From positions 180,433-244,432 of IMG/VR virus record IMGVR_UViG_3300017786_003484: a stretch of 64,000 nucleotides of DNA. The stretch is one strand, 5' to 3'. Position 1 is the first letter of the stretch. Every line of letters begins with the position of its first letter. This document shows, piece by piece, positions 11,238 to 57,101 of the stretch. The notes under the pieces were generated by a model. The model did not search any database. It worked only from the letters and a program-made list of their open reading frames with translations, and had not been told where the DNA came from. Position numbers and translations under genes: made by a program.

Positions 11238-11266
11238 AGCAAAAAAGTAACTTTTTTTGCTTTTTC
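11236..11266 (+). terminator. putative intrinsic terminator
   Basis: AAAGCAAAAAAG-TAA-CTTTTTTTGCTTT hairpin followed by Ts. Confidence 0.55.
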
Positions 11267-11277
11267 TTGCATTATTC

Positions 11278-11332
11278 GGTTGACCTTAACCTATACCCGT
11301 GCTATATTGTATAGACAATAAGGAATTAGGAG
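11278..11332 (+). promoter_or_regulatory. sigma70-type early promoter plus conserved leader
   Basis: TTGACC 11280-11285, N17, TATATT 11303-11308, ATAAGGAATTAGGAG 11318-11332. Confidence 0.85.
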
Positions 11333-11339
11333 AGCCACA

Positions 11340-11630
11340 ATGCAGTTACAAGAAGTTATTAATGCTATTAAAGTTTCAAGTTTTTCAAGTGAAGAATATA
11401 AGTCTGTTATAGATGCAGTTAATTTTGCTAGGTCACAAGCTGGTCAGCAAACTATTCGTCAGCTTCAAGTTGGTGATACTGTTACGTTTAACGGACGAAG
11501 AAATAAGTTAGTAACAGGTACGGTTGTTAAGATTAAAATTAAAAACGTTGTCGTTCTAGACAATGCAACTCAAACAAAATGGAATGTTCCTGCTTCGATG
11601 CTTAATTTAGTATCGTCAGCAGTCAAATAG
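11340..11630 (+). CDS. small protein with KOW/SH3-like C-terminal domain
   Basis: LQVGDTVTF..GTVVKI pattern. Confidence 0.6.
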   Translation: MQLQEVINAIKVSSFSSEEYKSVIDAVNFARSQAGQQTIRQLQVGDTVTFNGRRNKLVTGTVVKIKIKNVVVLDNATQTKWNVPASMLNLVSSAVK

Positions 11631-11636
11631 GTGCGA

Positions 11637-11713
11637 GGGCCTGTAGCTCAGCTGGATAGAGCGCCAGTCTACGAAACTGGAAGTCAGGGGTTCGAATCCC
11701 TTCAGGCCCACCA
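11637..11713 (+). tRNA. tRNA-Arg(ACG)
   Basis: Cloverleaf GGGCCTG/CAGGCCC, anticodon arm CCAGT-CTACGAA-ACTGG, GTTCGAATC, encoded CCA. Confidence 0.97.
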
Positions 11714-11935
11714 AAAAGACGTGGCGTTGATAGCGCCTAGTAGAGGCTAGCAGACTCTACGATGAGAAGGAGGTAACAACTCCAAAAAATATGCTCGATG
11801 GCAGTAGCCCGGCTAGGATCAAGTCGTTAGGTAGATAGATGAGGCTAGAGACCGGGTGAAAGCCCATATGGACTAGGGGTAGTACAGAGACTTAGGTGTG
11901 ATGTGCTATTTTGAAATTGAATCTGCCAGATCTTT
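11714..11935 (+). ncRNA. candidate structured ncRNA downstream of tRNA-Arg
   Basis: ORF-free, GC-richer; nested stems including GTAGAG/CTCTAC, GGAG/CTCC, TGGCAG/CTGCCA, AAGTC/GACTT and GGGT-GAAA-GCCC. Confidence 0.5.
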
Positions 11936-11966
11936 CCTAAAAAAAGTAAAAAAAGATGCATTAAAA

Positions 11967-12021
11967 GGTTGACCTTTGGTCCTATTTGTCGTATAGTATA
12001 AACATAATAAGGAACTAGGAG
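11967..12021 (+). promoter_or_regulatory. sigma70-type early promoter plus conserved leader
   Basis: TTGACC 11969-11974, N17, TATAGT 11992-11997, ATAAGGAACTAGGAG; upstream A-tracts. Confidence 0.85.
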
Positions 12022-12027
12022 AATACA

Positions 12028-12570
12028 ATGAATACATTAGTTAAACATATCGAAGCTCTTAACATTAAGACCCAGGAATGGGTAGATGCTGGTCCAGATC
12101 GTTGGGCAGGTATGTTGTCAACTGATGCCAAGCATTGGGCAGACTATGGTGTGTTTACACCTGCCCAATTGGACAGGTACTTAGATACACAGAGCTTGTA
12201 TGAGGTGATCTCTGATTGTGCTTCTAAGTCTTATGCTAGAGTTGAAATAGCAAGGCTTGAAACTGTTTCTGATGAGGAGTTTAAGAAGGAGCAAGACTAT
12301 TGGTTTGCTCAAAGCGAAATTGCATTCAATGAGGAGGTTGCCGCTAAAGCAGAAGCAGTAGCCAACTTTGAAGCCGAGGTTAATGTATGCCTCGAAGCTG
12401 GTGCTATTGATAGAGCAACTGCTCTACGTTGGATGACTGAAGGCGAAAGGTTCTATCATCCACACGATGTAGACCATTGGGTTTGGGATAAAGGTATTCT
12501 GTTTACACCTGAGGGTAAGGCAGTTTGTAAAGAACTAGAAGTTCTTATAGAATATGACGAGGTTGCATAA
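12028..12570 (+). CDS. early hypothetical protein
   Basis: Follows the promoter cassette; 180 aa. Confidence 0.75.
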   Translation: MNTLVKHIEALNIKTQEWVDAGPDRWAGMLSTDAKHWADYGVFTPAQLDRYLDTQSLYEVISDCASKSYARVEIARLETVSDEEFKKEQDYWFAQSEIAFNEEVAAKAEAVANFEAEVNVCLEAGAIDRATALRWMTEGERFYHPHDVDHWVWDKGILFTPEGKAVCKELEVLIEYDEVA

Positions 12571-32485: not shown

Positions 32486-32986
32486 ATGAATGATACATTA
32501 GCATTAGTACCAGAAGATCACCCGATACTCACAACAGCCGTGCCTGTTGTTGATAATCCTAAATATGTTGAGATGCTGTCAAAAGGTATGTTTCAACTTA
32601 TGTGGCAATATGATGGTATTGGATTGGCGGCTACTCAGGTTGGTATGTTTTTAAGAATGTTTATAATGGGTCCTAAGCAAGGCCCACATTATGTTTGTAT
32701 TAATCCTGAAATAGTAGCAGTCTCGGAAGAATCTATTTTAGATATTGAAGGGTGTTTAACATTCCGTGATCTATGGTTAAATATTAGTAGACCCAAATGG
32801 GTAGATGCTAGGTATCAAACATTAGATGGATCTATTGTTGAAAAGAGATTTGAAGGTTTAATGGCTAGGTGTTATTTACATGAGCTTGATCATTTAAATG
32901 GCATAGTTTTTACAAGTATAGTTTCAAAGTTAAAACTAGAGATGGCAAAGAAGAAAAGAAAAAAAAGAATAGGAGAGACTAAATGA
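32486..32986 (+). CDS. def: peptide deformylase
   Basis: GIGLAATQVG, EGCLT, HELDHLNG. Confidence 0.95.
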   Translation: MNDTLALVPEDHPILTTAVPVVDNPKYVEMLSKGMFQLMWQYDGIGLAATQVGMFLRMFIMGPKQGPHYVCINPEIVAVSEESILDIEGCLTFRDLWLNISRPKWVDARYQTLDGSIVEKRFEGLMARCYLHELDHLNGIVFTSIVSKLKLEMAKKKRKKRIGETK

Positions 32987-35196
32987 GCGAACAACCTGAT
33001 TCAAACAATCGTATTAACGAAGTAATTGCAAGGGCATTCCAAGAAGCAATATCAAGAGAGCATGAATATGTTACGTTAGAACATATACTACAAGTGATGC
33101 TTGATGAAGATGACATTAGAGATATACTTTCTGATTTACATGCCAATGTGATGTTATTAAAAGATGATGTATCAGACTGGTTAAGAGAACAAGAAGAAAT
33201 CCGTGTTGACGGAATGACAAAGCCTAGAAAAACTGCTTCTATTGAAAGAGCTTTTAATAGAGCCTACACTCAAGCAATTTTCACAGGTAGAGGACACATG
33301 GAGCCTTTAGATTTGCTTATCTCTATTACTGCTGAAAAATCAAGCTATGCAAACTATTTCTTAATGAAGCATGGTATTAGTAAAGATATGCTTCTTGCTT
33401 ATATTACTAGAATCAAAGACGGTAGAAGCAAAGAAAGTAAAGCACAGAAGAAAAGAGATAGTGAAAAGATATTAAAAAAGTTTACTACTAACTTAATTAA
33501 ATCTGCTAAAGAAGAACTTATTGATCCTCTAATAGGCAGAGAGCAAGAAGTATTCTATCTTGCCAAAACATTAAGTCGTAAAAAGAAAAACAATGTTATT
33601 ATGGTTGGTGATCCAGGCGTAGGTAAAACTGCTATTGTTGAAGGACTAGCCGTTGCTATTGAAAAGGATTTAGTACCAGAGATTCTAAAAGGCAAAACTA
33701 TCTATAGTTTAGATATGGGAAGGCTACTAGCAGGAACTAGATTCAGAGGAGACTTTGAAGAACGTATGCAACAGGTGCTTGAAGCATTAGAAGATAGACA
33801 AGATGCTATCTTGTTTATTGATGAAATACACATGATTATGGGTGCTGGTAGTGCTGGCGGTGGTAGCATGGATGTGGCAAATATGTTAAAGCCAGCCTTA
33901 GAAAAAGGCAAACTAAGATGTGTTGGTAGCACAACGTACGAAGAGTTTAGAGAGAATTTCGAATCTGACAGAGCATTACTAAGACGTTTTACTAAAGTAG
34001 ATATTGTAGAGCCAACTGCAGAAGAAACAAAGTTAATGTTAAGACAAGTTATTCCGTTGTACAGTAAGTATCACAACATAGGATGCAATGAAACAGTTAT
34101 TGATACAGCCGTAGATTTATCAATGAAGTTTATGTTAGATAAGAAACTTCCTGATAAAGCTATTGACATCTTAGATGCTGGTATGGCTAGAATAAAAGTA
34201 CAGGCTAATGATGAAAAAGAAATGACATTAGATCATATTAGACAAGAAATCTCAGACTTAACTCGTATACCAATTGAACAGTTAGGTGAACATAAAGATG
34301 TGGCTGTTAACGATTTAGAAAGTATCATGAGAACACAAGTTTTTGGACAAGACGAAGCTATTGATACTATAATGAATGCTGTTTATATTGCAAACTCAGG
34401 GCTTAAAGAAGTTGACAGACCAATGGGGAATTTTCTCTTTGTAGGACCAACAGGTACTGGTAAAACAGAATTATGTTTACAACTTGCAGAAGGAATGGGC
34501 ATGGAACTAGTTAGGTTTGATATGAGCGAGTATAAAGAAGCACATAAGATATCAGCTTTAATTGGATCACCTCCTGGTTACGTTGGTTATGCTGAAGGTA
34601 AAGCAGGATCAGGTAAACTTGTTAACGAATTAGAACGTGTACCTAATTGTGTATTGCTGTTTGATGAGATTGAAAAAGCCCATCCAGATGTTATTCAAGT
34701 ATTACTTGGCTTAATGGATAGTGGACTTATTACAGGATCAGATAACAAACAAGTATCAGGTCGTAATGCATTTGTTATTATGACTTCTAACCTTGGTGCT
34801 AGAGATTCTGAAAAATCTATGATTGGATTTGGAGATACCAAAAATGATTCAGCAACTGATACAGCAGTCAAAAACTTCTTTGCTCCAGAGTTTAGAAACA
34901 GACTTGATTCTGTTGTTAAGTTTAATAGATTAGATAAAACTATTGTTCGAAGGATTGCTGATAAGTTTATGACTCAGATCAGAATACAAATGAAAGAGAA
35001 TGGAAACAATCTAATTTATACTGACAAGGTTCTTGATTATATTGCTTCAGAAGGATTCAGTGATACAATGGGTGCCAGACCTATGAAGAGATTAATCGAT
35101 AAAGAAATTAAGTTAGACATTGCAAAATCAATTATTAAAACTAAGAAAAAAGATCATACAGTTGACGTTTTAAATGGAAGATTAATGGTAAAATAA
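32983..35196 (+). CDS. clpA: ATP-dependent Clp protease ATPase subunit ClpA
   Basis: Clp N-domain, GDPGVGKT and GPTGTGKT Walker A motifs, RFDMSEY, IGF loop, no M-domain. Confidence 0.93.
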   Translation: MSEQPDSNNRINEVIARAFQEAISREHEYVTLEHILQVMLDEDDIRDILSDLHANVMLLKDDVSDWLREQEEIRVDGMTKPRKTASIERAFNRAYTQAIFTGRGHMEPLDLLISITAEKSSYANYFLMKHGISKDMLLAYITRIKDGRSKESKAQKKRDSEKILKKFTTNLIKSAKEELIDPLIGREQEVFYLAKTLSRKKKNNVIMVGDPGVGKTAIVEGLAVAIEKDLVPEILKGKTIYSLDMGRLLAGTRFRGDFEERMQQVLEALEDRQDAILFIDEIHMIMGAGSAGGGSMDVANMLKPALEKGKLRCVGSTTYEEFRENFESDRALLRRFTKVDIVEPTAEETKLMLRQVIPLYSKYHNIGCNETVIDTAVDLSMKFMLDKKLPDKAIDILDAGMARIKVQANDEKEMTLDHIRQEISDLTRIPIEQLGEHKDVAVNDLESIMRTQVFGQDEAIDTIMNAVYIANSGLKEVDRPMGNFLFVGPTGTGKTELCLQLAEGMGMELVRFDMSEYKEAHKISALIGSPPGYVGYAEGKAGSGKLVNELERVPNCVLLFDEIEKAHPDVIQVLLGLMDSGLITGSDNKQVSGRNAFVIMTSNLGARDSEKSMIGFGDTKNDSATDTAVKNFFAPEFRNRLDSVVKFNRLDKTIVRRIADKFMTQIRIQMKENGNNLIYTDKVLDYIASEGFSDTMGARPMKRLIDKEIKLDIAKSIIKTKKKDHTVDVLNGRLMVK

Positions 35197-35850
35197 ATGT
35201 ATACTAAGAAGAAAACACAAAGACTTTTCTATAAAAAATGGCCATATAAGGTATTAATTAAAGTTGATCATGCGGAGAATATAAAAAGAGCTGATGGTCT
35301 TGAATTATTAACAGCATACTCTCCTCGTATGACAAAGGATAGAGAAGAGACATATCAATTTAAATCTAAGTTCAAAAGATGGTTTAAAAGACATATACCT
35401 AACGGCGGTATACGTTGCGAAAGAACTATAAGTTTGTTTTTGTATACACAGAAAGAAGTTGATTTTATTGTAGACACATGGAAGCATAACATTGAAGAAG
35501 TATATGCCCCTGAATCAGAAGAAGCAATGACATTACTCCAAGACAATGTATACGATATTGTTAGAGAACATGATTGGTATAGAAAGTATCCAGTAAGGGC
35601 TAGAATACTTTATACCAGAGAATTTGCATCTAATGGCAGACAAGCATTAGAGGAATCTTTAAAACAAATTGAACAAGATGACTGGCATTGTCAGGGTACG
35701 TTAATGAGTGCATTAGAAAGCGGTGGAAATTTACCGTATGCTTGTGGACAGCCTTACTATCTTTACTTAAAATCAAACGATGATGCTGTTATTCTACGTT
35801 TAACTTGTGGTGATTACATAGAAAGATTTGAAAGAATCCGTAAACCCTAA
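35197..35850 (+). CDS. hypothetical protein
   Basis: Coupled to clpA; T.RLFY.KWPYKV start. Confidence 0.7.
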   Translation: MYTKKKTQRLFYKKWPYKVLIKVDHAENIKRADGLELLTAYSPRMTKDREETYQFKSKFKRWFKRHIPNGGIRCERTISLFLYTQKEVDFIVDTWKHNIEEVYAPESEEAMTLLQDNVYDIVREHDWYRKYPVRARILYTREFASNGRQALEESLKQIEQDDWHCQGTLMSALESGGNLPYACGQPYYLYLKSNDDAVILRLTCGDYIERFERIRKP

Positions 35851-36329: not shown

Positions 36330-38642
36330 ATGGGAATTAGAGCATATACAGGTGGACAACTTGGTAATTCAACCACAGCCGAGAACCAGTCACCAACTGG
36401 ATTAACAGTTGAAGAAGTGCAAGATGTTATTGGAATCGCTTTAAATAATGCCGTCCAAGGCGGAACAACAGTTTATGATGATGTTACTGGAACAATAGGA
36501 ATTACATTACCTGATGCAGAAGTAGCTACAAGCACATCTGCTGGTGCTATTATTCCTGGAACAGGTTTAGAGGTTGATGCAAATGGTATTGTAACTCCAA
36601 ACGTTGCAACTGCAACAACTGTTGGTGTTGTTAGAATTGGAACCGGTTTAGCGGTTGATGGTTTTGGAACTTTATCGGCAGTAGTTTCATCAGCAGGAGC
36701 AACAGCATTAAGCGGATTAACAGATGTTGATACTAATGGAGTAACAACAGGACAAATTTTAAAATATGATGGTACATCCTTTGTACCGGCTGACGATGCA
36801 GGTATTGCAGACTATAACAATTTAACTAACTTACCAACATTATTTGATGGAGACTATACTAGTTTATCAAACACACCAGCATTACCAACAGACATATCTG
36901 ATTTAACAGATGTAGGAAATTTAATTGGTAGTGGAGGCGGAGGAGCCGCAGGACCACAAGGACCTGCCGGAGCAGACGGAGCAGACGGAGCCGATGGAGC
37001 AGACGGAGCAACTGGTGCAACAGGACCAGCAGGAGCAGACGGAGCAACAGGACCAGCAGGAGCAGACGGAGCCGCAGGACCACAAGGTGTAGCAGGAGCA
37101 ACTGGTGCAACAGGACCCGCAGGTATAGATGGAACAACAATTACAACTGCAACTGTTGATGTAAATGATGACCTACTTATTACATTAAGTGACGGAACAG
37201 TTATTAATGCCGGTAACTCAACTGGAGCAACTGGTGCAACAGGAGCACAAGGTGCAACTGGAGCAACTGGACCACAAGGAGCACAAGGATTACAAGGACT
37301 AGGTGTAGCAAGTGCAACAGTAGATGCTAATGATGATTTAATCATTGTTTTAAGTGACGGAAGTCAATTAAATGCAGGTAATACTGCTGGACCACAGGGT
37401 ATACAAGGAATTCAAGGAAGTACTGGAGCAACAGGTGCTGTCGGACCTGCAGGTAATGGCGTAGCAACTGCAACTGTTGATGCAAATGATGATTTACAAA
37501 TAACACTAACTGATGGTAGTATAATTAATGCAGGTAATACTGCTGGACCACAAGGTATACAAGGAATTCAAGGTGCAACTGGTGCAACTGGTTCTGCAGG
37601 ACAAAATGGATTAACTGTTACCAATGCAGTCAAAGATGCAAATGACGATTTAATTATTACATTAAGTGATGCTTCAACAATTAATGCAGGAAATATTACT
37701 GGACCTGCTGGAGCACAAGGTATACAAGGTGTAGCAGGAGCAGATAGCACAGTAGTAGGACCTGCTGGAGCCGACGGAGCTGACGGAGCAGACGGAGCAA
37801 CTGGACCTGCCGGAGCAACTGGACCTGCCGGACCTGCTGGAGCAGATGGAGCAGATGGAGCAGATGGTTCTAATGGAATTGACCTAACAGCATTTTCAAT
37901 AACAACTGGTGCTTTAACAGCAAACGGCGGATTAGCATACGATAATACAACTGGTGTGTTTACTTTTAATCCGGTAACTGCTGGCGGTGCTTCTAATGTA
38001 ACATCTATAGGAACTTTGTCAGACGTTGATGTTACAGGATTAACTGATGGACAAGTATTAGCATTTGATAGTGGATCAAACACATGGGAACCAACTACAA
38101 TGTCAGGCGGTGGTGCAAGTACATTATCAGCATTAACAGATGTTAGCACAACTGCACCAGCAATAGGACAAGCGATTGCATGGGATGGATCAGAATGGGC
38201 ACCTACTACAATATCAGGAGGAGGCGGAGGCGCCGCGAGTGGAATATTTAGAGCCGAGGTTACTGTAAATTATGCAAGTAATGGTTCGTTATCATCAGTT
38301 TCAGTACTAAGTGGTGGAATATCTGCTACGGTAGTAGACTCAACTTCAACAGTATGTACAGTCGAGTTTGAATTTACTGGAAGTGTATGCAACCCATTAA
38401 GTATACAAGTTTATGGTTATCAGAGAGTAGCCAATCAATACGTTACAAGAGCATTAGCAAGTGACTTCTCAAACAGAAAGGTCGCCGCTGGAGGCTCATC
38501 AGGAAGTCCTACTGCATTCAACTCGTATAATCCGGCAACAAACAAGTTAACTTTAAGTTTAACAAAATCGTTAACTGGTGCAAGTGGCGGACTTGGACAA
38601 ACGACTGAGGCAATAGTTTCCTTCTTATTAAGTAACTCGTAA
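36330..38642 (+). CDS. collagen-like tail fibre protein
   Basis: Multiple Gly-X-Y runs, L..L.DV fibre repeats, G/A/T-rich composition. Confidence 0.85.
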   Translation: MGIRAYTGGQLGNSTTAENQSPTGLTVEEVQDVIGIALNNAVQGGTTVYDDVTGTIGITLPDAEVATSTSAGAIIPGTGLEVDANGIVTPNVATATTVGVVRIGTGLAVDGFGTLSAVVSSAGATALSGLTDVDTNGVTTGQILKYDGTSFVPADDAGIADYNNLTNLPTLFDGDYTSLSNTPALPTDISDLTDVGNLIGSGGGGAAGPQGPAGADGADGADGADGATGATGPAGADGATGPAGADGAAGPQGVAGATGATGPAGIDGTTITTATVDVNDDLLITLSDGTVINAGNSTGATGATGAQGATGATGPQGAQGLQGLGVASATVDANDDLIIVLSDGSQLNAGNTAGPQGIQGIQGSTGATGAVGPAGNGVATATVDANDDLQITLTDGSIINAGNTAGPQGIQGIQGATGATGSAGQNGLTVTNAVKDANDDLIITLSDASTINAGNITGPAGAQGIQGVAGADSTVVGPAGADGADGADGATGPAGATGPAGPAGADGADGADGSNGIDLTAFSITTGALTANGGLAYDNTTGVFTFNPVTAGGASNVTSIGTLSDVDVTGLTDGQVLAFDSGSNTWEPTTMSGGGASTLSALTDVSTTAPAIGQAIAWDGSEWAPTTISGGGGGAASGIFRAEVTVNYASNGSLSSVSVLSGGISATVVDSTSTVCTVEFEFTGSVCNPLSIQVYGYQRVANQYVTRALASDFSNRKVAAGGSSGSPTAFNSYNPATNKLTLSLTKSLTGASGGLGQTTEAIVSFLLSNS
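36943..37870 (+). repeat. collagen 9-bp repeats alternating with four copies of a ~28-aa spacer module
   Basis: GGAGCAGAC-type repeats; ATVDANDDL.I.L.DG..INAGN x4; near-identical DNA repeat at ~37371 and ~37527. Confidence 0.85.
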
Positions 38643-56057: not shown

Positions 56058-56063
56058 ACCTTT

Positions 56064-56882
56064 TTATATAAATTCAACTCTATCAAATATAAATGAGTCT
56101 TTATATCTGAGACTAAATTCTTTGAATTGGTCACTCTCAACATATCCAATAGGAAATTCATAAGGTATATTAGTCATATTATAAGATTTAATCCAATCTT
56201 TAAATTGTGTTGACTTGTATATCTTTTTTCTGTTATCATTTAAATCAATAAAGAATCCACCAAAAGAACCTAACCTTCCTGTACAATCATCTTGTGTAGG
56301 ATCATCATTTTCTATAAATGATTGAAGTACACATTTACCTAAGATAGATTGATCTAGTAAAACTAAATTTTGTCGATTCATATCTGGATATCCGTAATTC
56401 AACTGTTGATCTTCTTTAGAAAATTGCAACCAAGTAGAACGATTGCTTTGTCCTCGATTAACATTAAAATGTATATTAGTTGGAATATTTTCTTCATAAA
56501 ATATACTATTTTGGCCTGGTGTAGTATAACATTCTAATCTGTGTACTGATTCATTTATTTGATTGATCATTTCAAAGTCTAGTATTCTAAAATTAGAAGT
56601 AAAATATCTGTGAAGCATGTTGAGGGTTGTCTGATTAAAATCAAATCTGTCTGGAACATTTAAGTTCGAGTTAAGAATAGTTAGAGCTTGTAATATATTG
56701 TTCCAATGTTCTGTGATTTTGCTTTCGTCTGGTTCCTGCTTTTTGAAAGTTTCTATTATATCATATCTATAATAAGATCTATGCATTTTCTTAAAATGAT
56801 CAAACCATTTTTTAACTGCTGGTTTGTCAAATAGTTTTACTTCTATTTGTTTATTATTCTTAAATATCATCTTGAGTTTCAT
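56064..56882 (-). CDS. hypothetical protein
   Basis: Q..LN.LH.YF..IN..VH.LE motif; start moved to ATG 56882 (TAAATA-N5-ATG). Confidence 0.7.
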   Translation of the reverse strand: MKLKMIFKNNKQIEVKLFDKPAVKKWFDHFKKMHRSYYRYDIIETFKKQEPDESKITEHWNNILQALTILNSNLNVPDRFDFNQTTLNMLHRYFTSNFRILDFEMINQINESVHRLECYTTPGQNSIFYEENIPTNIHFNVNRGQSNRSTWLQFSKEDQQLNYGYPDMNRQNLVLLDQSILGKCVLQSFIENDDPTQDDCTGRLGSFGGFFIDLNDNRKKIYKSTQFKDWIKSYNMTNIPYEFPIGYVESDQFKEFSLRYKDSFIFDRVEFI

Positions 56883-56930
56883 ATCAATATTTAACGTTTT
56901 TAAATGAAAGAGCAACAGTTAAATAGTTGG

Positions 56931-57018
56931 ATGGTAAATAAAAGCATACACAAGTAATTCGCAAGTTGGGAGAAGGCGCCAACACGTTCGTCTAGTTTAA
57001 AACTAGGCGGTTTTTTTT
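56931..57018 (+). ncRNA. candidate small RNA / micro-ORF transcript
   Basis: TAAATA 56920-56925, 8-codon ORF, GTTGG/CCAAC hairpin, strong terminator. Confidence 0.5.
56989..57018 (+). terminator. intrinsic terminator
   Basis: CGTCTAGTT-TAA-AACTAGGCG followed by T8. Confidence 0.85.
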
Positions 57019-57037
57019 GACTTTTTTTCCAGAAAAA

Positions 57038-57092
57038 GGTTGACCTTTGGACCAACCCATGCTATATTATAAAGACAATAAGGAATTAGGAG
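57038..57092 (+). promoter_or_regulatory. sigma70-type early promoter plus conserved leader
   Basis: TTGACC 57040-57045, N17, TATATT, ATAAGGAATTAGGAG 57078-57092. Confidence 0.85.
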
Positions 57093-57101
57093 AAATACTA
57101 A

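What the first reader, a model, noticed from the sequence alone, without database searches (positions are those of the whole stretch)
11714..11935. Unexplained ~220-nt highly structured RNA immediately after tRNA-Arg
Seen: ORF-free and GC-richer than its flanks. A 5' domain has hairpins GGCG/CGCC, GTAGAG/CTCTAC and GGAG/CTCC. A 3' domain is closed by TGGCAG(11799-11804)/CTGCCA(11923-11928), with inner TAGC/GCTA, AAGTC/GACTT, CTAG/CTAG and a GGGT-GAAA-GCCC GNRA hairpin followed by TATGG (half of the 11-nt tetraloop receptor). Known: phage tRNA regions host large ncRNAs and tRNA-associated ribozymes. It lacks RNase P, tmRNA and hammerhead signatures by eye. Inference: a candidate new ncRNA released by tRNA processing.
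Basis: partly seen in the sequence, partly recalled or inferred. Interest (0 to 1): 0.62.

Follow-up and report, generated by a model that had tools for sequence, protein, structure and literature searches.

The report
New structured RNA beside phage tRNA-Arg
Right after a tRNA-Arg gene of an uncultured marine jumbo phage lies a real, previously undescribed folded RNA of about 210 nt that is transcribed with the tRNA and swapped between phages together with it. Its function is unknown.

Summary

- **Known families:** it matches no Rfam 15 family, even at E<=10. Its folding energy alone is unremarkable (z = -1.6).
- **Relatives:** I found 7 sequence variants in 4 lineages of related marine phage contigs.
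- **Fold:** the variants support about 10 helices on the + strand. 98.4% of cells are paired, against 93.1% in shuffles (0/500). Nine pairs carry compensatory changes.
the proposed closing helix TGGCAG/CTGCCA is not conserved; CUGCC pairs with GGUAG at 11830-11836. The GNRA hairpin is dispensable, and no 11-nt receptor is present.
- **Expression:** a metatranscriptome contig runs from just downstream of a predicted promoter, through a small ORF and the tRNA, to the foot of that helix. There it meets sequencing adapter, so the RNA 3' end lies at about 11927.
- **Exchange:** tRNA, element and the following spacer and promoter move between phages as one cassette.
- **Not always next to a tRNA:** in two lineages the element does not abut a tRNA.
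- **Closest analogue:** phage T4 RNAD and RNAC, which sit directly after T4 tRNA-Arg. This is a shared layout; the model found no homology.

Function is unknown.

The parts
11280..11308 (+). Predicted sigma-70-type promoter (TTGACC-17-TATATT) of the unit ORF P0001, tRNA-Arg and element.
   Evidence: Promoter scan, 10 of 12 matches. The RNA contig of run X15 begins at 11335, and 11293-11334 carries no RNA contig.
11340..11630 (+). 96-aa ORF (P0001) of unknown function, first gene of the unit.
   Evidence: Covered by the same RNA contig as the tRNA and the element.
11637..11713 (+). tRNA-Arg(ACG) with encoded CCA.
   Evidence: ARAGORN and Rfam RF00005 at 70.8 bits.
11714..11717 (+). AAAA linker between the CCA and the first conserved base. 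Presumed site of tRNA 3' trailer cleavage; this is an inference.
   Evidence: Sequence. The linker reads AAAA in the window and L064, and AAAG in L054.
11718..11825 (+). 5' domain with four hairpins. P2 is 11723-28 with 11732-37. P3 is 11740-45 with 11755-60. P4 is 11769-72 with 11780-83. P5 is 11792-11802 with 11807-14. A 3-bp closure GAC 11718-20 with GUC 11823-25 is predicted, but it never varies and so is untested.
   Evidence: RNAalifold and pair counts. P3 changes A-U to G-C. P4 has G-C and G-U variants. P5 changes G-C to A-U. P2 is invariant apart from one U-G to C-G change in L111.
11830..11927 (+). 3' domain, a three-way junction. P6 is 11830-36 with 11921-27. P6b is 11840-42 with 11917-19. 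P7 is 11845-48 with 11873-76 and carries an inner hairpin: CC 11852-53 with GG 11870-71, then GGGU 11854-57 with GCCC 11862-65, and GAAA loop 11858-61. P8 is a hairpin of variable length, 11878-85 with 11903-10.
   Evidence: P6 occurs as GGUAGA/UCUGCC, GAUAGA/UCUAUC and GAUGGA/UCCAUC. P7 occurs as CUAG/CUAG, CCAG/CUGG and CGGG/CCCG. L054 lacks the inner P7 hairpin. The domain folds to this shape on its own in the window and in L054.
11927..11932 (+). 3' end of the RNA in metatranscriptome run X15, at the last base pair of P6.
   Evidence: The X15 contig (615 nt) matches 11335-11932 and continues as GGAAGAGCGTCGTGTAG. With the shared AGATC (11928-32) this reads as the Illumina adapter, which I recognise from my own knowledge. 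No RNA contig lies on 11933-12017.
11928..11937 (+). Conserved tail GAUC followed by a run of U: AGAUCUUUCC in the window, GAUCUUUUUU in L054, AGAUCGUUUU in L058 and L041. It may be the U-tract of a terminator. It may also pair with AGGAUC at 11814-19.
   Evidence: Alignment. My hand count of the pairing gives 6 of 6 pairs in three lineages and 5 of 6 in L058, with one G-U to C-G change in L041: inconclusive. The terminator scan does not call it.
11969..11997 (+). Promoter of the next gene (P0002, 12028-12570). It lies inside the cassette that is exchanged with the tRNA and the element.
   Evidence: Promoter scan. The next RNA contig starts at 12018. Mosaic identities.

Best explanation
The stretch encodes a real, previously undescribed structured RNA of about 210 nt on the + strand, from about 11718 to 11927.

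**Fold.** A 5' domain carries four hairpins. A 3' domain is a three-way junction closed by P6. P8, and the hairpin inside P7, vary in length or can be missing.

**How it is made in this phage.**
- It is the last part of one transcription unit: promoter (~11280), 96-aa ORF, tRNA-Arg(ACG), element.
- The RNA ends at the foot of P6.
- Host tRNA-maturation enzymes would cut the precursor: RNase P at the tRNA 5' end, and RNase E or a trailer nuclease in the AAAA linker after CCA. That would free the element as a separate, compact RNA.
- The P6 helix and the U-run behind it would define or protect the 3' end.

**Likely role.** I propose that the freed RNA is a stable trans-acting RNA, binding a protein or another RNA. 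This is the same genomic logic as T4 RNAD and RNAC after T4 tRNA-Arg.

**Shown:** the fold (by covariation), the strand, co-transcription with the tRNA, a 3' end near 11927, and exchange together with the tRNA as one cassette.

**Inferred:** cleavage from the tRNA, stability as a separate RNA, and action in trans. The molecular function is unknown.
For: **Fold and strand**
- Of 304 cells, 98.4% form standard pairs, against 93.1% in shuffles (0 of 500 reach it).
- Nine pairs change on both sides (1 of 500 shuffles). Slid controls give at most 3 such pairs and 31-44% pairing.
- Many G-U pairs would be A-C mismatches on the other strand, so the + strand is the folded one.

**Not coding**
- Indels break all frames.

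**Selection**
- The element is identical across many samples within each lineage.
- Between L058 and L111 the element differs at 2 positions, while 6 of the 18 nt just behind it differ.
- Peripheral helices vary in length or are deleted while their base pairs are kept.

**Expression**
- It is found in metatranscriptome assemblies from three studies (X15, X17, X20).
- The X15 contig spans 11335-11932 and then runs into adapter.
- The stretches without RNA contigs (11293-11334 and 11933-12017) coincide with the two predicted promoters.

**Link to the tRNA**
- Window against L054: flanking genes are 99-99.7% identical. The tRNA is 85.7%, the element 78% and the spacer with promoter 79% identical.
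- Window against L064: flanking genes are 66-74% identical. The tRNA is 100%, the element 92% and the spacer with promoter 96% identical.

**Precedent**
- In T4, tRNA-Arg is followed 1 nt later by rnaD and then rnaC.
- These small RNAs come from the T4 tRNA region and their role is unknown (PMC3014915, PMC9697503).
Against: - No 5' end was seen. Only assembled contigs of RNA runs were available, and the X15 contig shows the uncut precursor.
- The adapter junction rests on one contig of depth 8.8.
- In two of four lineages the element does not abut a tRNA. In L041 it follows a 106-aa ORF. In L058 it lies 90 nt after a small ORF, and no tRNA lies within 2.2-2.7 kb upstream in the longer contigs of that lineage. 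tRNA processing therefore cannot be its general route of release.
- In those two lineages an ORF starts 20-50 nt downstream with no recognisable promoter, which fits a cis role.
- Only 7 variants in 4 lineages are known, and the consensus fold was derived from these same sequences.
- The blocks GATGAGAAGGA and GATCAAGTCG are invariant because the search pattern required them.
Confidence: 0.5

Rival explanations
1. A cis-acting 3'-end module. The element acts only as the terminator and 3'-exonuclease block of the upstream transcript, and insulates it from the next promoter. It has no role as a separate RNA.
For: The RNA ends at the foot of P6 and no RNA contig lies on 11933-12017. A GAUC-plus-U-run tail is kept in all lineages. 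No ordinary terminator lies between 11714 and 11969, although the preceding gene has a canonical one at about 11238-11268. The element always sits at the 3' side of a short ORF or a tRNA.
Against: About ten helices, with covariation and conserved junctions, are far more than termination or end protection needs. The terminator scan does not call the site. In L041 and L058 a downstream ORF with no recognisable promoter needs read-through. A long structured trailer does not help tRNA maturation.
Confidence: 0.22
2. A riboswitch or attenuator. The element senses a ligand or factor and controls read-through into the gene behind it.
For: The size and the multi-helix junction architecture resemble large aptamers. 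A terminal helix plus U-run could serve as an expression platform. In L041 and L058 an ORF starts 20-50 nt behind it.
Against: The three downstream genes (P0002, ORF310, ORF341) are unrelated. In the window the downstream gene has its own promoter. ORF341 homologues at 56-77% identity lack the element and sit inside tight operons. No Rfam riboswitch matches. The element is exchanged together with the upstream tRNA.
Confidence: 0.1
3. A self-cleaving or self-processing ribozyme that frees itself from any transcript. That would explain the sharp conserved 5' boundary in three different contexts.
For: The 5' boundary is sharp: conservation starts at GACGUGG after unrelated upstream sequence in all contexts. 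Junction nucleotides are conserved. Self-cleaving ribozymes are common in phage and tRNA neighbourhoods (general knowledge).
Against: No Rfam ribozyme family matches at E<=10. By eye, no complement to the 5' GACGUGG exists for an HDV-like P1. The uncut precursor is assembled in X15. Nothing here tests catalysis.
Confidence: 0.08
4. A passenger without its own function: leftover sequence that hitch-hikes with the tRNA cassette, or a DNA-level site such as a recombination site.
For: Distribution is narrow, with one copy per genome and only two IMG/VR records. MFE is unremarkable. It moves with the tRNA.
Against: Compensatory changes with G-U tolerance indicate selection on an RNA fold. The element is invariant within lineages while the adjacent spacer diverges. 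It also persists without an adjacent tRNA (L058 group).
Confidence: 0.06

Closest known systems
Phage T4 RNAD (species 2) and RNAC (species 1), small stable RNAs of the T4 tRNA region
   Same: The layout is the same: in T4, tRNA-Arg is followed 1 nt later by rnaD (119 nt) and then rnaC (139 nt), on the same strand and ORF-free. They are phage-encoded, transcribed with tRNAs, and of unknown role (PMC3014915, PMC9697503).
   Different: No sequence or structure homology: model R1 gives no significant match on rnaC or rnaD. T4 rnaC carries a tRNA-like T-arm and rnaD ends in CCA (sequence). This element has no tRNA-like module by ARAGORN or Rfam. T4 has two RNAs and this phage one. T4's tRNA-Arg has anticodon UCU (my own knowledge) and this one ACG. 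The element also occurs away from tRNAs.
3' external transcribed spacer of the E. coli glyW-cysT-leuZ tRNA operon, an sRNA sponge released by RNase E (my own knowledge; not checked in a paper here)
   Same: A functional RNA lies in the 3' trailer of a tRNA transcript and is released by tRNA processing.
   Different: That spacer is short and simple and acts by base pairing. This element is about 210 nt with about ten helices. No target is known.
Large orphan structured RNAs of phages and marine metagenomes held in Rfam (GOLLD, ROOL, HEARO, IMES-1 to IMES-4)
   Same: Orphan, ornate RNAs found by comparative analysis. Several lie near tRNAs in phages or are abundant in marine metatranscriptomes (my own knowledge).
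   Different: None of the 4227 Rfam families gave a plausible match, even at E<=10. This RNA is much smaller than GOLLD or ROOL.

Membership tests
T4 RNAC/RNAD-type tRNA-region stable RNA | Lies directly 3' of a tRNA gene on the same strand and is co-transcribed with it. | tested here: met
   The gap is 4 nt. One RNA contig spans ORF, tRNA and element. This holds in the window, L064 and L054 lineages, but not in L041 or L058.
T4 RNAC/RNAD-type tRNA-region stable RNA | Sequence or structure homology to T4 rnaC or rnaD. | tested here: not met
   R1 with filters off on the T4 tRNA region: the best match on the rnaC/rnaD strand scores -0.1 bits, E 8.8.
T4 RNAC/RNAD-type tRNA-region stable RNA | Accumulates as a discrete, stable, processed RNA. 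| tested here: inconclusive
   A 3' end at about 11927 is suggested by one adapter junction. No 5' end or abundance can be read from contigs.
Any Rfam 15 family (RNase P, tmRNA, hammerhead, HDV-like, twister, hatchet, pistol, riboswitches, Y RNA, 6S, GOLLD, ROOL, IMES) | Covariance-model score at or near the family's gathering threshold. | tested here: not met
   At gathering thresholds only tRNA matches. At E<=10 over 11550-12050 the only hits inside the element are noise: TUG1_2 at 18.9 bits against a threshold of 90, and sX4 at 11.4 bits against 70.
GNRA tetraloop with 11-nt tetraloop receptor | A GNRA loop is present. | tested here: met
   GAAA at 11858-61 closes GGGU/GCCC. It is present in 6 of 7 variants and deleted in L054.
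GNRA tetraloop with 11-nt tetraloop receptor | Receptor strands 5'-CCUAAG...UAUGG-3' facing each other. | tested here: not met
   Opposite AUAUGG the strand reads CC followed directly by GGGU. L041 has ACAAGG. No CCUAAG is placed to pair.
Intrinsic (Rho-independent) terminator | A GC-rich hairpin followed within 0-2 nt by a U-tract. | tested here: inconclusive
   The scan does not call it. P6 is followed by AGAUC and then 3-6 U in all lineages. The RNA ends at 11927-32.
Riboswitch or cis-regulatory leader | Consistently upstream of one gene family or pathway. | tested here: not met
   Three unrelated downstream genes. Homologues of ORF341 lack it.
Bacterial Y RNA (YrlA) with Ro60, or retron msr-msd | A partner protein gene (TROVE/Ro60, RtcB or a reverse transcriptase) in the genome. 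| tested here: not met
   No PF05731, PF01139 or PF00078 in G000, which is 74% complete.

The most novel reading that the evidence does not exclude
The element is a new class of functional RNA. It could be a self-processing ribozyme, or a protein- or tRNA-enzyme-binding decoy used against a host defence or RNA-processing factor. It travels with tRNA-Arg(ACG) as a mobile two-part cassette among marine jumbo phages.
Probability: 0.12. Interest if true: 0.85.

Novelty: new variant of a known kind. Interest (0 to 1): 0.55.

Why it matters
Phage tRNA regions have been known since T4 to hold small stable RNAs whose role is still unknown after decades.

This element is a second, unrelated example. 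It has the same layout (tRNA-Arg followed by a structured RNA), a covariation-supported fold, field expression data, and evidence that tRNA and RNA are exchanged together between phages.

That gives a comparative handle on why phages attach ornate RNAs to tRNAs. It also offers a compact RNA of about 210 nt with about ten helices for structural and biochemical work.

Its value is limited for now by three things: a narrow distribution, an uncultured host, and the absence of any functional clue.

Tried and rejected
- **Rfam.** Searches at gathering thresholds and at E<=10 gave nothing but tRNA.
- **Thermodynamic test.** z = -1.64 on the + strand and -1.25 on the - strand, so not informative.
- **Synteny searches.** P0002 and P0001 relatives in IMG/VR (L002-L040) lack the element. 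Homology to the closest relatives starts only at the P0002 promoter, about 11963.
- **Exact patterns from the window.** They failed because relatives differ.
- **14-mer hits in G010 and G011.** They lie in coding sequence and are chance.
- **Gapped-pattern hits.**
  - Metagenome scan: of 44 hits, 9 loci hold the element, one of them the window's own record; none of the 35 others matches R1.
  - GTDB genome scan: all 20 hits are chance by R1.
- **R1 match at window 35567-35792** (14.5 bits). It lies inside a 217-aa ORF and is a false positive.
- **RNase P resemblance by eye** (CAG..CCCGGCU, GAUGA). Dropped, because no RNase P model scores at all.
- **HDV-like P1.** By eye there is no complement to the 5' GACGUGG.
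- **T4 rnaC/rnaD homology.** None.
- **Y RNA, RtcB or retron idea.** No partner genes.
- **5' UTR of the ORF341 family.** Rejected.
- **Small conserved ORF.** The ATG at GATGAG opens 46 codons in L041 but meets a stop after 4 codons in the window.
- **Outer helix AGGAUC/GAUCUU.** It crosses the predicted GAC/GUC closure and stays inconclusive (hand count).

Full report
**Source.** The window is the last 64 kb of a 244-kb IMG/VR virus record (G000). CheckV estimates it at 74% complete, its GC content is 35.6%, and it carries 7 dispersed tRNA genes. It is also deposited as a WGS metagenome contig (L091). Phage genes in the window include a collagen-like tail fibre and a ClpA/B-like ATPase. Near-identical DNA occurs in more than 14 seawater or marine sequencing runs from many studies. 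It is an uncultured marine jumbo phage, and its host is unknown.

**The observation.**
- tRNA-Arg(ACG) lies at 11637-11713 with an encoded CCA.
- From 11714 to the next promoter (TTGACC-17-TATAGT, 11969-11997) no ORF is conserved between relatives. Two 1-nt indels break every frame.
- GC content is 46.4%, against 36.1% for the window.
- No Rfam family matches at gathering thresholds. At E<=10 only noise appears.
- Folding energy is not exceptional: z = -1.64 on the + strand and -1.25 on the - strand.
- On the single sequence alone, "highly structured" is therefore not demonstrable.

**Finding relatives.**
- Neighbour-gene searches in IMG/VR showed that the closest relatives have P0002 (88% aa identity) without the tRNA or the element upstream of it. 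Homology begins only at the P0002 promoter.
- P0001 homologues elsewhere also lack the element.
- Searching whole related records found one copy in G001 (85% identity). There it lies after a promoter and a 106-aa ORF that follow a tRNA Ala-Gly-Arg(ACG) cluster.
- A gapped pattern in JGI metagenomes, filtered with nhmmer, gave three more lineages:
  - L064/L075, with the same synteny as the window.
  - L054, with the same synteny and a shortened element.
  - L058/L069/L070, with no tRNA nearby and a different downstream gene.
- Because the pattern demanded GATGAGAAGGA and GATCAAGTCG, those two blocks are invariant by ascertainment. The true breadth of the family is probably underestimated.
- Exact-protein look-ups added 25 more contigs, from ENA, JGI and Logan assemblies. 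Within each lineage the element is identical, apart from one new variant, L111.
- Nothing was found in 50,697 deposited phage genomes.
- Nothing real was found in GTDB genomes.
- No further IMG/VR record holds it.
- Each genome has a single copy.

**Structure.** RNAalifold on 7 sequences (6 distinct) gives 52 pairs in 11 helices. The counts on that structure are as follows.

| Measure | Observed | Control |
|---|---|---|
| Cells forming a standard pair | 98.4% | 93.1% in shuffles; 0 of 500 reach the observed value |
| Pairs changed on both sides | 9 | 1 of 500 shuffles reach it |
| Covariation score | 0.241 | 0.133 in shuffles |
| Partners slid by 1-3 columns | n/a | 31-44% pairing, at most 3 such pairs |

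The clearest covarying helices:

| Helix | Window coordinates | Variants seen |
|---|---|---|
| P6 | 11830-36 with 11921-27 | GGUAGA/UCUGCC, GAUAGA/UCUAUC, GAUGGA/UCCAUC |
| P7 | 11845-48 with 11873-76 | CUAG/CUAG, CCAG/CUGG, CGGG/CCCG |
| P3 | 11740-45 with 11755-60 | A-U changes to G-C |
| P5 | GGC 11800-02 with GCC 11807-09 | G-C changes to A-U |

- P8 is a hairpin of very different length in each lineage, with a kept GGGG/UUUU base.
- L054 lacks the inner GNRA hairpin of P7 and keeps the outer helix.
- Frequent G-U pairs put the fold on the + strand.
- The 3' domain folds to the same three-way junction on its own in the window and in L054.
- Caveats: there are few sequences, the structure was derived from them, and the P1 closure (GAC/GUC) never varies.

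- In RNA run X15, a 615-nt contig matches 11335-11932 with 2 differences, both in the P8 insert.
- It then continues as GGAAGAGCGTCGTGTAG. Together with the genomic AGATC at 11928-32, this reads as the Illumina adapter, which I recognise from my own knowledge. The insert therefore ends at 11927, exactly the last pair of P6, or at the latest at 11932.
- No RNA contig covers 11293-11334 or 11933-12017. These are the two predicted promoters, and the next contig starts at 12018.
- This pattern fits RNA rather than contaminating DNA.
- It shows one unit: promoter, P0001 ORF, tRNA-Arg, element, 3' end.
- Runs X17 and X20, from other studies, hold contigs inside the element.
- Contigs cannot give 5' ends, strand or abundance. 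Processing at the tRNA 3' end is therefore an inference.
- The preceding gene ends with an ordinary A/U-rich terminator at about 11238-11268. No such terminator lies behind the element, so its terminal helix plus U-run probably serves that purpose.

**Mosaic structure**, as percent nucleotide identity to the window:

| Compared with | Flanking genes (P0003, P0001, P0002) | tRNA | Element | Spacer with promoter |
|---|---|---|---|---|
| L054 | 99-99.7% | 85.7% | 78% | 79% |
| L064 | 66-74% | 100% | 92% | 96% |

tRNA-Arg(ACG), the element and the spacer with promoter are therefore exchanged between phages as one cassette. In G001 a promoter-plus-ORF unit sits between the tRNA and the element. 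In the L058 group the element stands without a tRNA.

**Interpretation.**
- The number of helices, the conserved junctions and the variable periphery are typical of an RNA with a tertiary fold and a specific partner. A mere terminator would not need them.
- The most likely model is a stable RNA freed from the tRNA precursor. I give this mechanism a confidence of about 0.5, and about 0.9 that it is a genuine structured RNA.
- Rivals:
  - a purely cis-acting 3'-end module (0.22);
  - a riboswitch or attenuator (0.10), weakened by unrelated downstream genes and by ORF341 homologues that lack it;
  - a ribozyme (0.08; untestable here);
  - a passenger without function (0.06).

**Comparison with known RNAs.**
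- T4 has the same layout: tRNA-Arg, then rnaD 1 nt later, then rnaC. Their roles are unknown (PMC3014915, PMC9697503).
- R1 finds no homology to them. T4 rnaC carries a tRNA-like T-arm that this element lacks.
- The element works like, but is not a member of, that pair.
- No Ro60, RtcB or reverse transcriptase gene is present in the record.

**Verdict.** This is a genuine new structured RNA family of narrow distribution. It is linked to tRNA-Arg and expressed in the sea, and its function is unknown.

Noticed in passing
window 11637-12000 compared with L054 1783-2127 and L064 6027-6418: The tRNA-Arg, element and spacer-with-promoter block has an evolutionary history opposite to its flanking genes. 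It is about 80% identical where the flanks are 99% identical, and 92-100% identical where the flanks are about 70% identical. This indicates cassette exchange between phages.
   Followed up: partly
L011:4759-5031 (also L010-L026): In more distant relatives, tRNA-Arg(TCT) is followed 14 nt later by a gene for ribosomal protein S21 (PF01165, E 8e-15).
   Followed up: partly
window 11238-11268: A canonical A/U-rich intrinsic terminator (GCAAAAAAG..CUUUUUUUGC plus a U-run) lies right after the P0003 stop codon. The X15 RNA contig ends at 11292.
   Followed up: partly
window 11280-11340 and 11969-12027; L004 2935-2998, 5010-5058, 5252-5304: A repeated promoter-plus-RBS module (TTGACC-17-TATAGT ... 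ATAATAAGGAAYTAGGAGA) stands in front of several small genes. It looks like a portable expression cassette.
   Followed up: no
L006:5820-5992 and L005:4791-4928: ORF-free, GC-richer stretches of 173 nt and at least 138 nt lie between or after tRNA genes in related contigs. They could be other tRNA-linked RNAs.
   Followed up: no
window 56058-57100: About 1 kb after tRNA-Leu and tRNA-Met has no + strand ORF longer than 55 aa. It holds only a 283-aa TTG-start ORF on the - strand, with no PHROG match. Rfam finds nothing there.
   Followed up: partly
window 32983-35196 and 36330-38642: A ClpA/ClpB-like double AAA+ ATPase (phrog_4871, E 5e-234) and a collagen-repeat tail fibre protein.
   Followed up: partly
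L069:1768-2154 and L108:4088-4474, compared with L058 and L109: An HNH endonuclease ORF is present downstream of ORF341 in some contigs of the L058 lineage and absent in others. It is a likely mobile insertion.
   Followed up: no
L032:5885-6275: ARAGORN calls a permuted tmRNA (tag VASNDDHYEMALAA) in a related 90-kb viral contig.
   Followed up: no
L098-L107: Homologues of ORF341 sit in glycan-modification clusters with a sulfotransferase, a glycosyltransferase, a mannose-1-phosphate guanylyltransferase or cupin, and an Hc1-like protein. This hints at a sugar-modifying role for ORF341.
   Followed up: no
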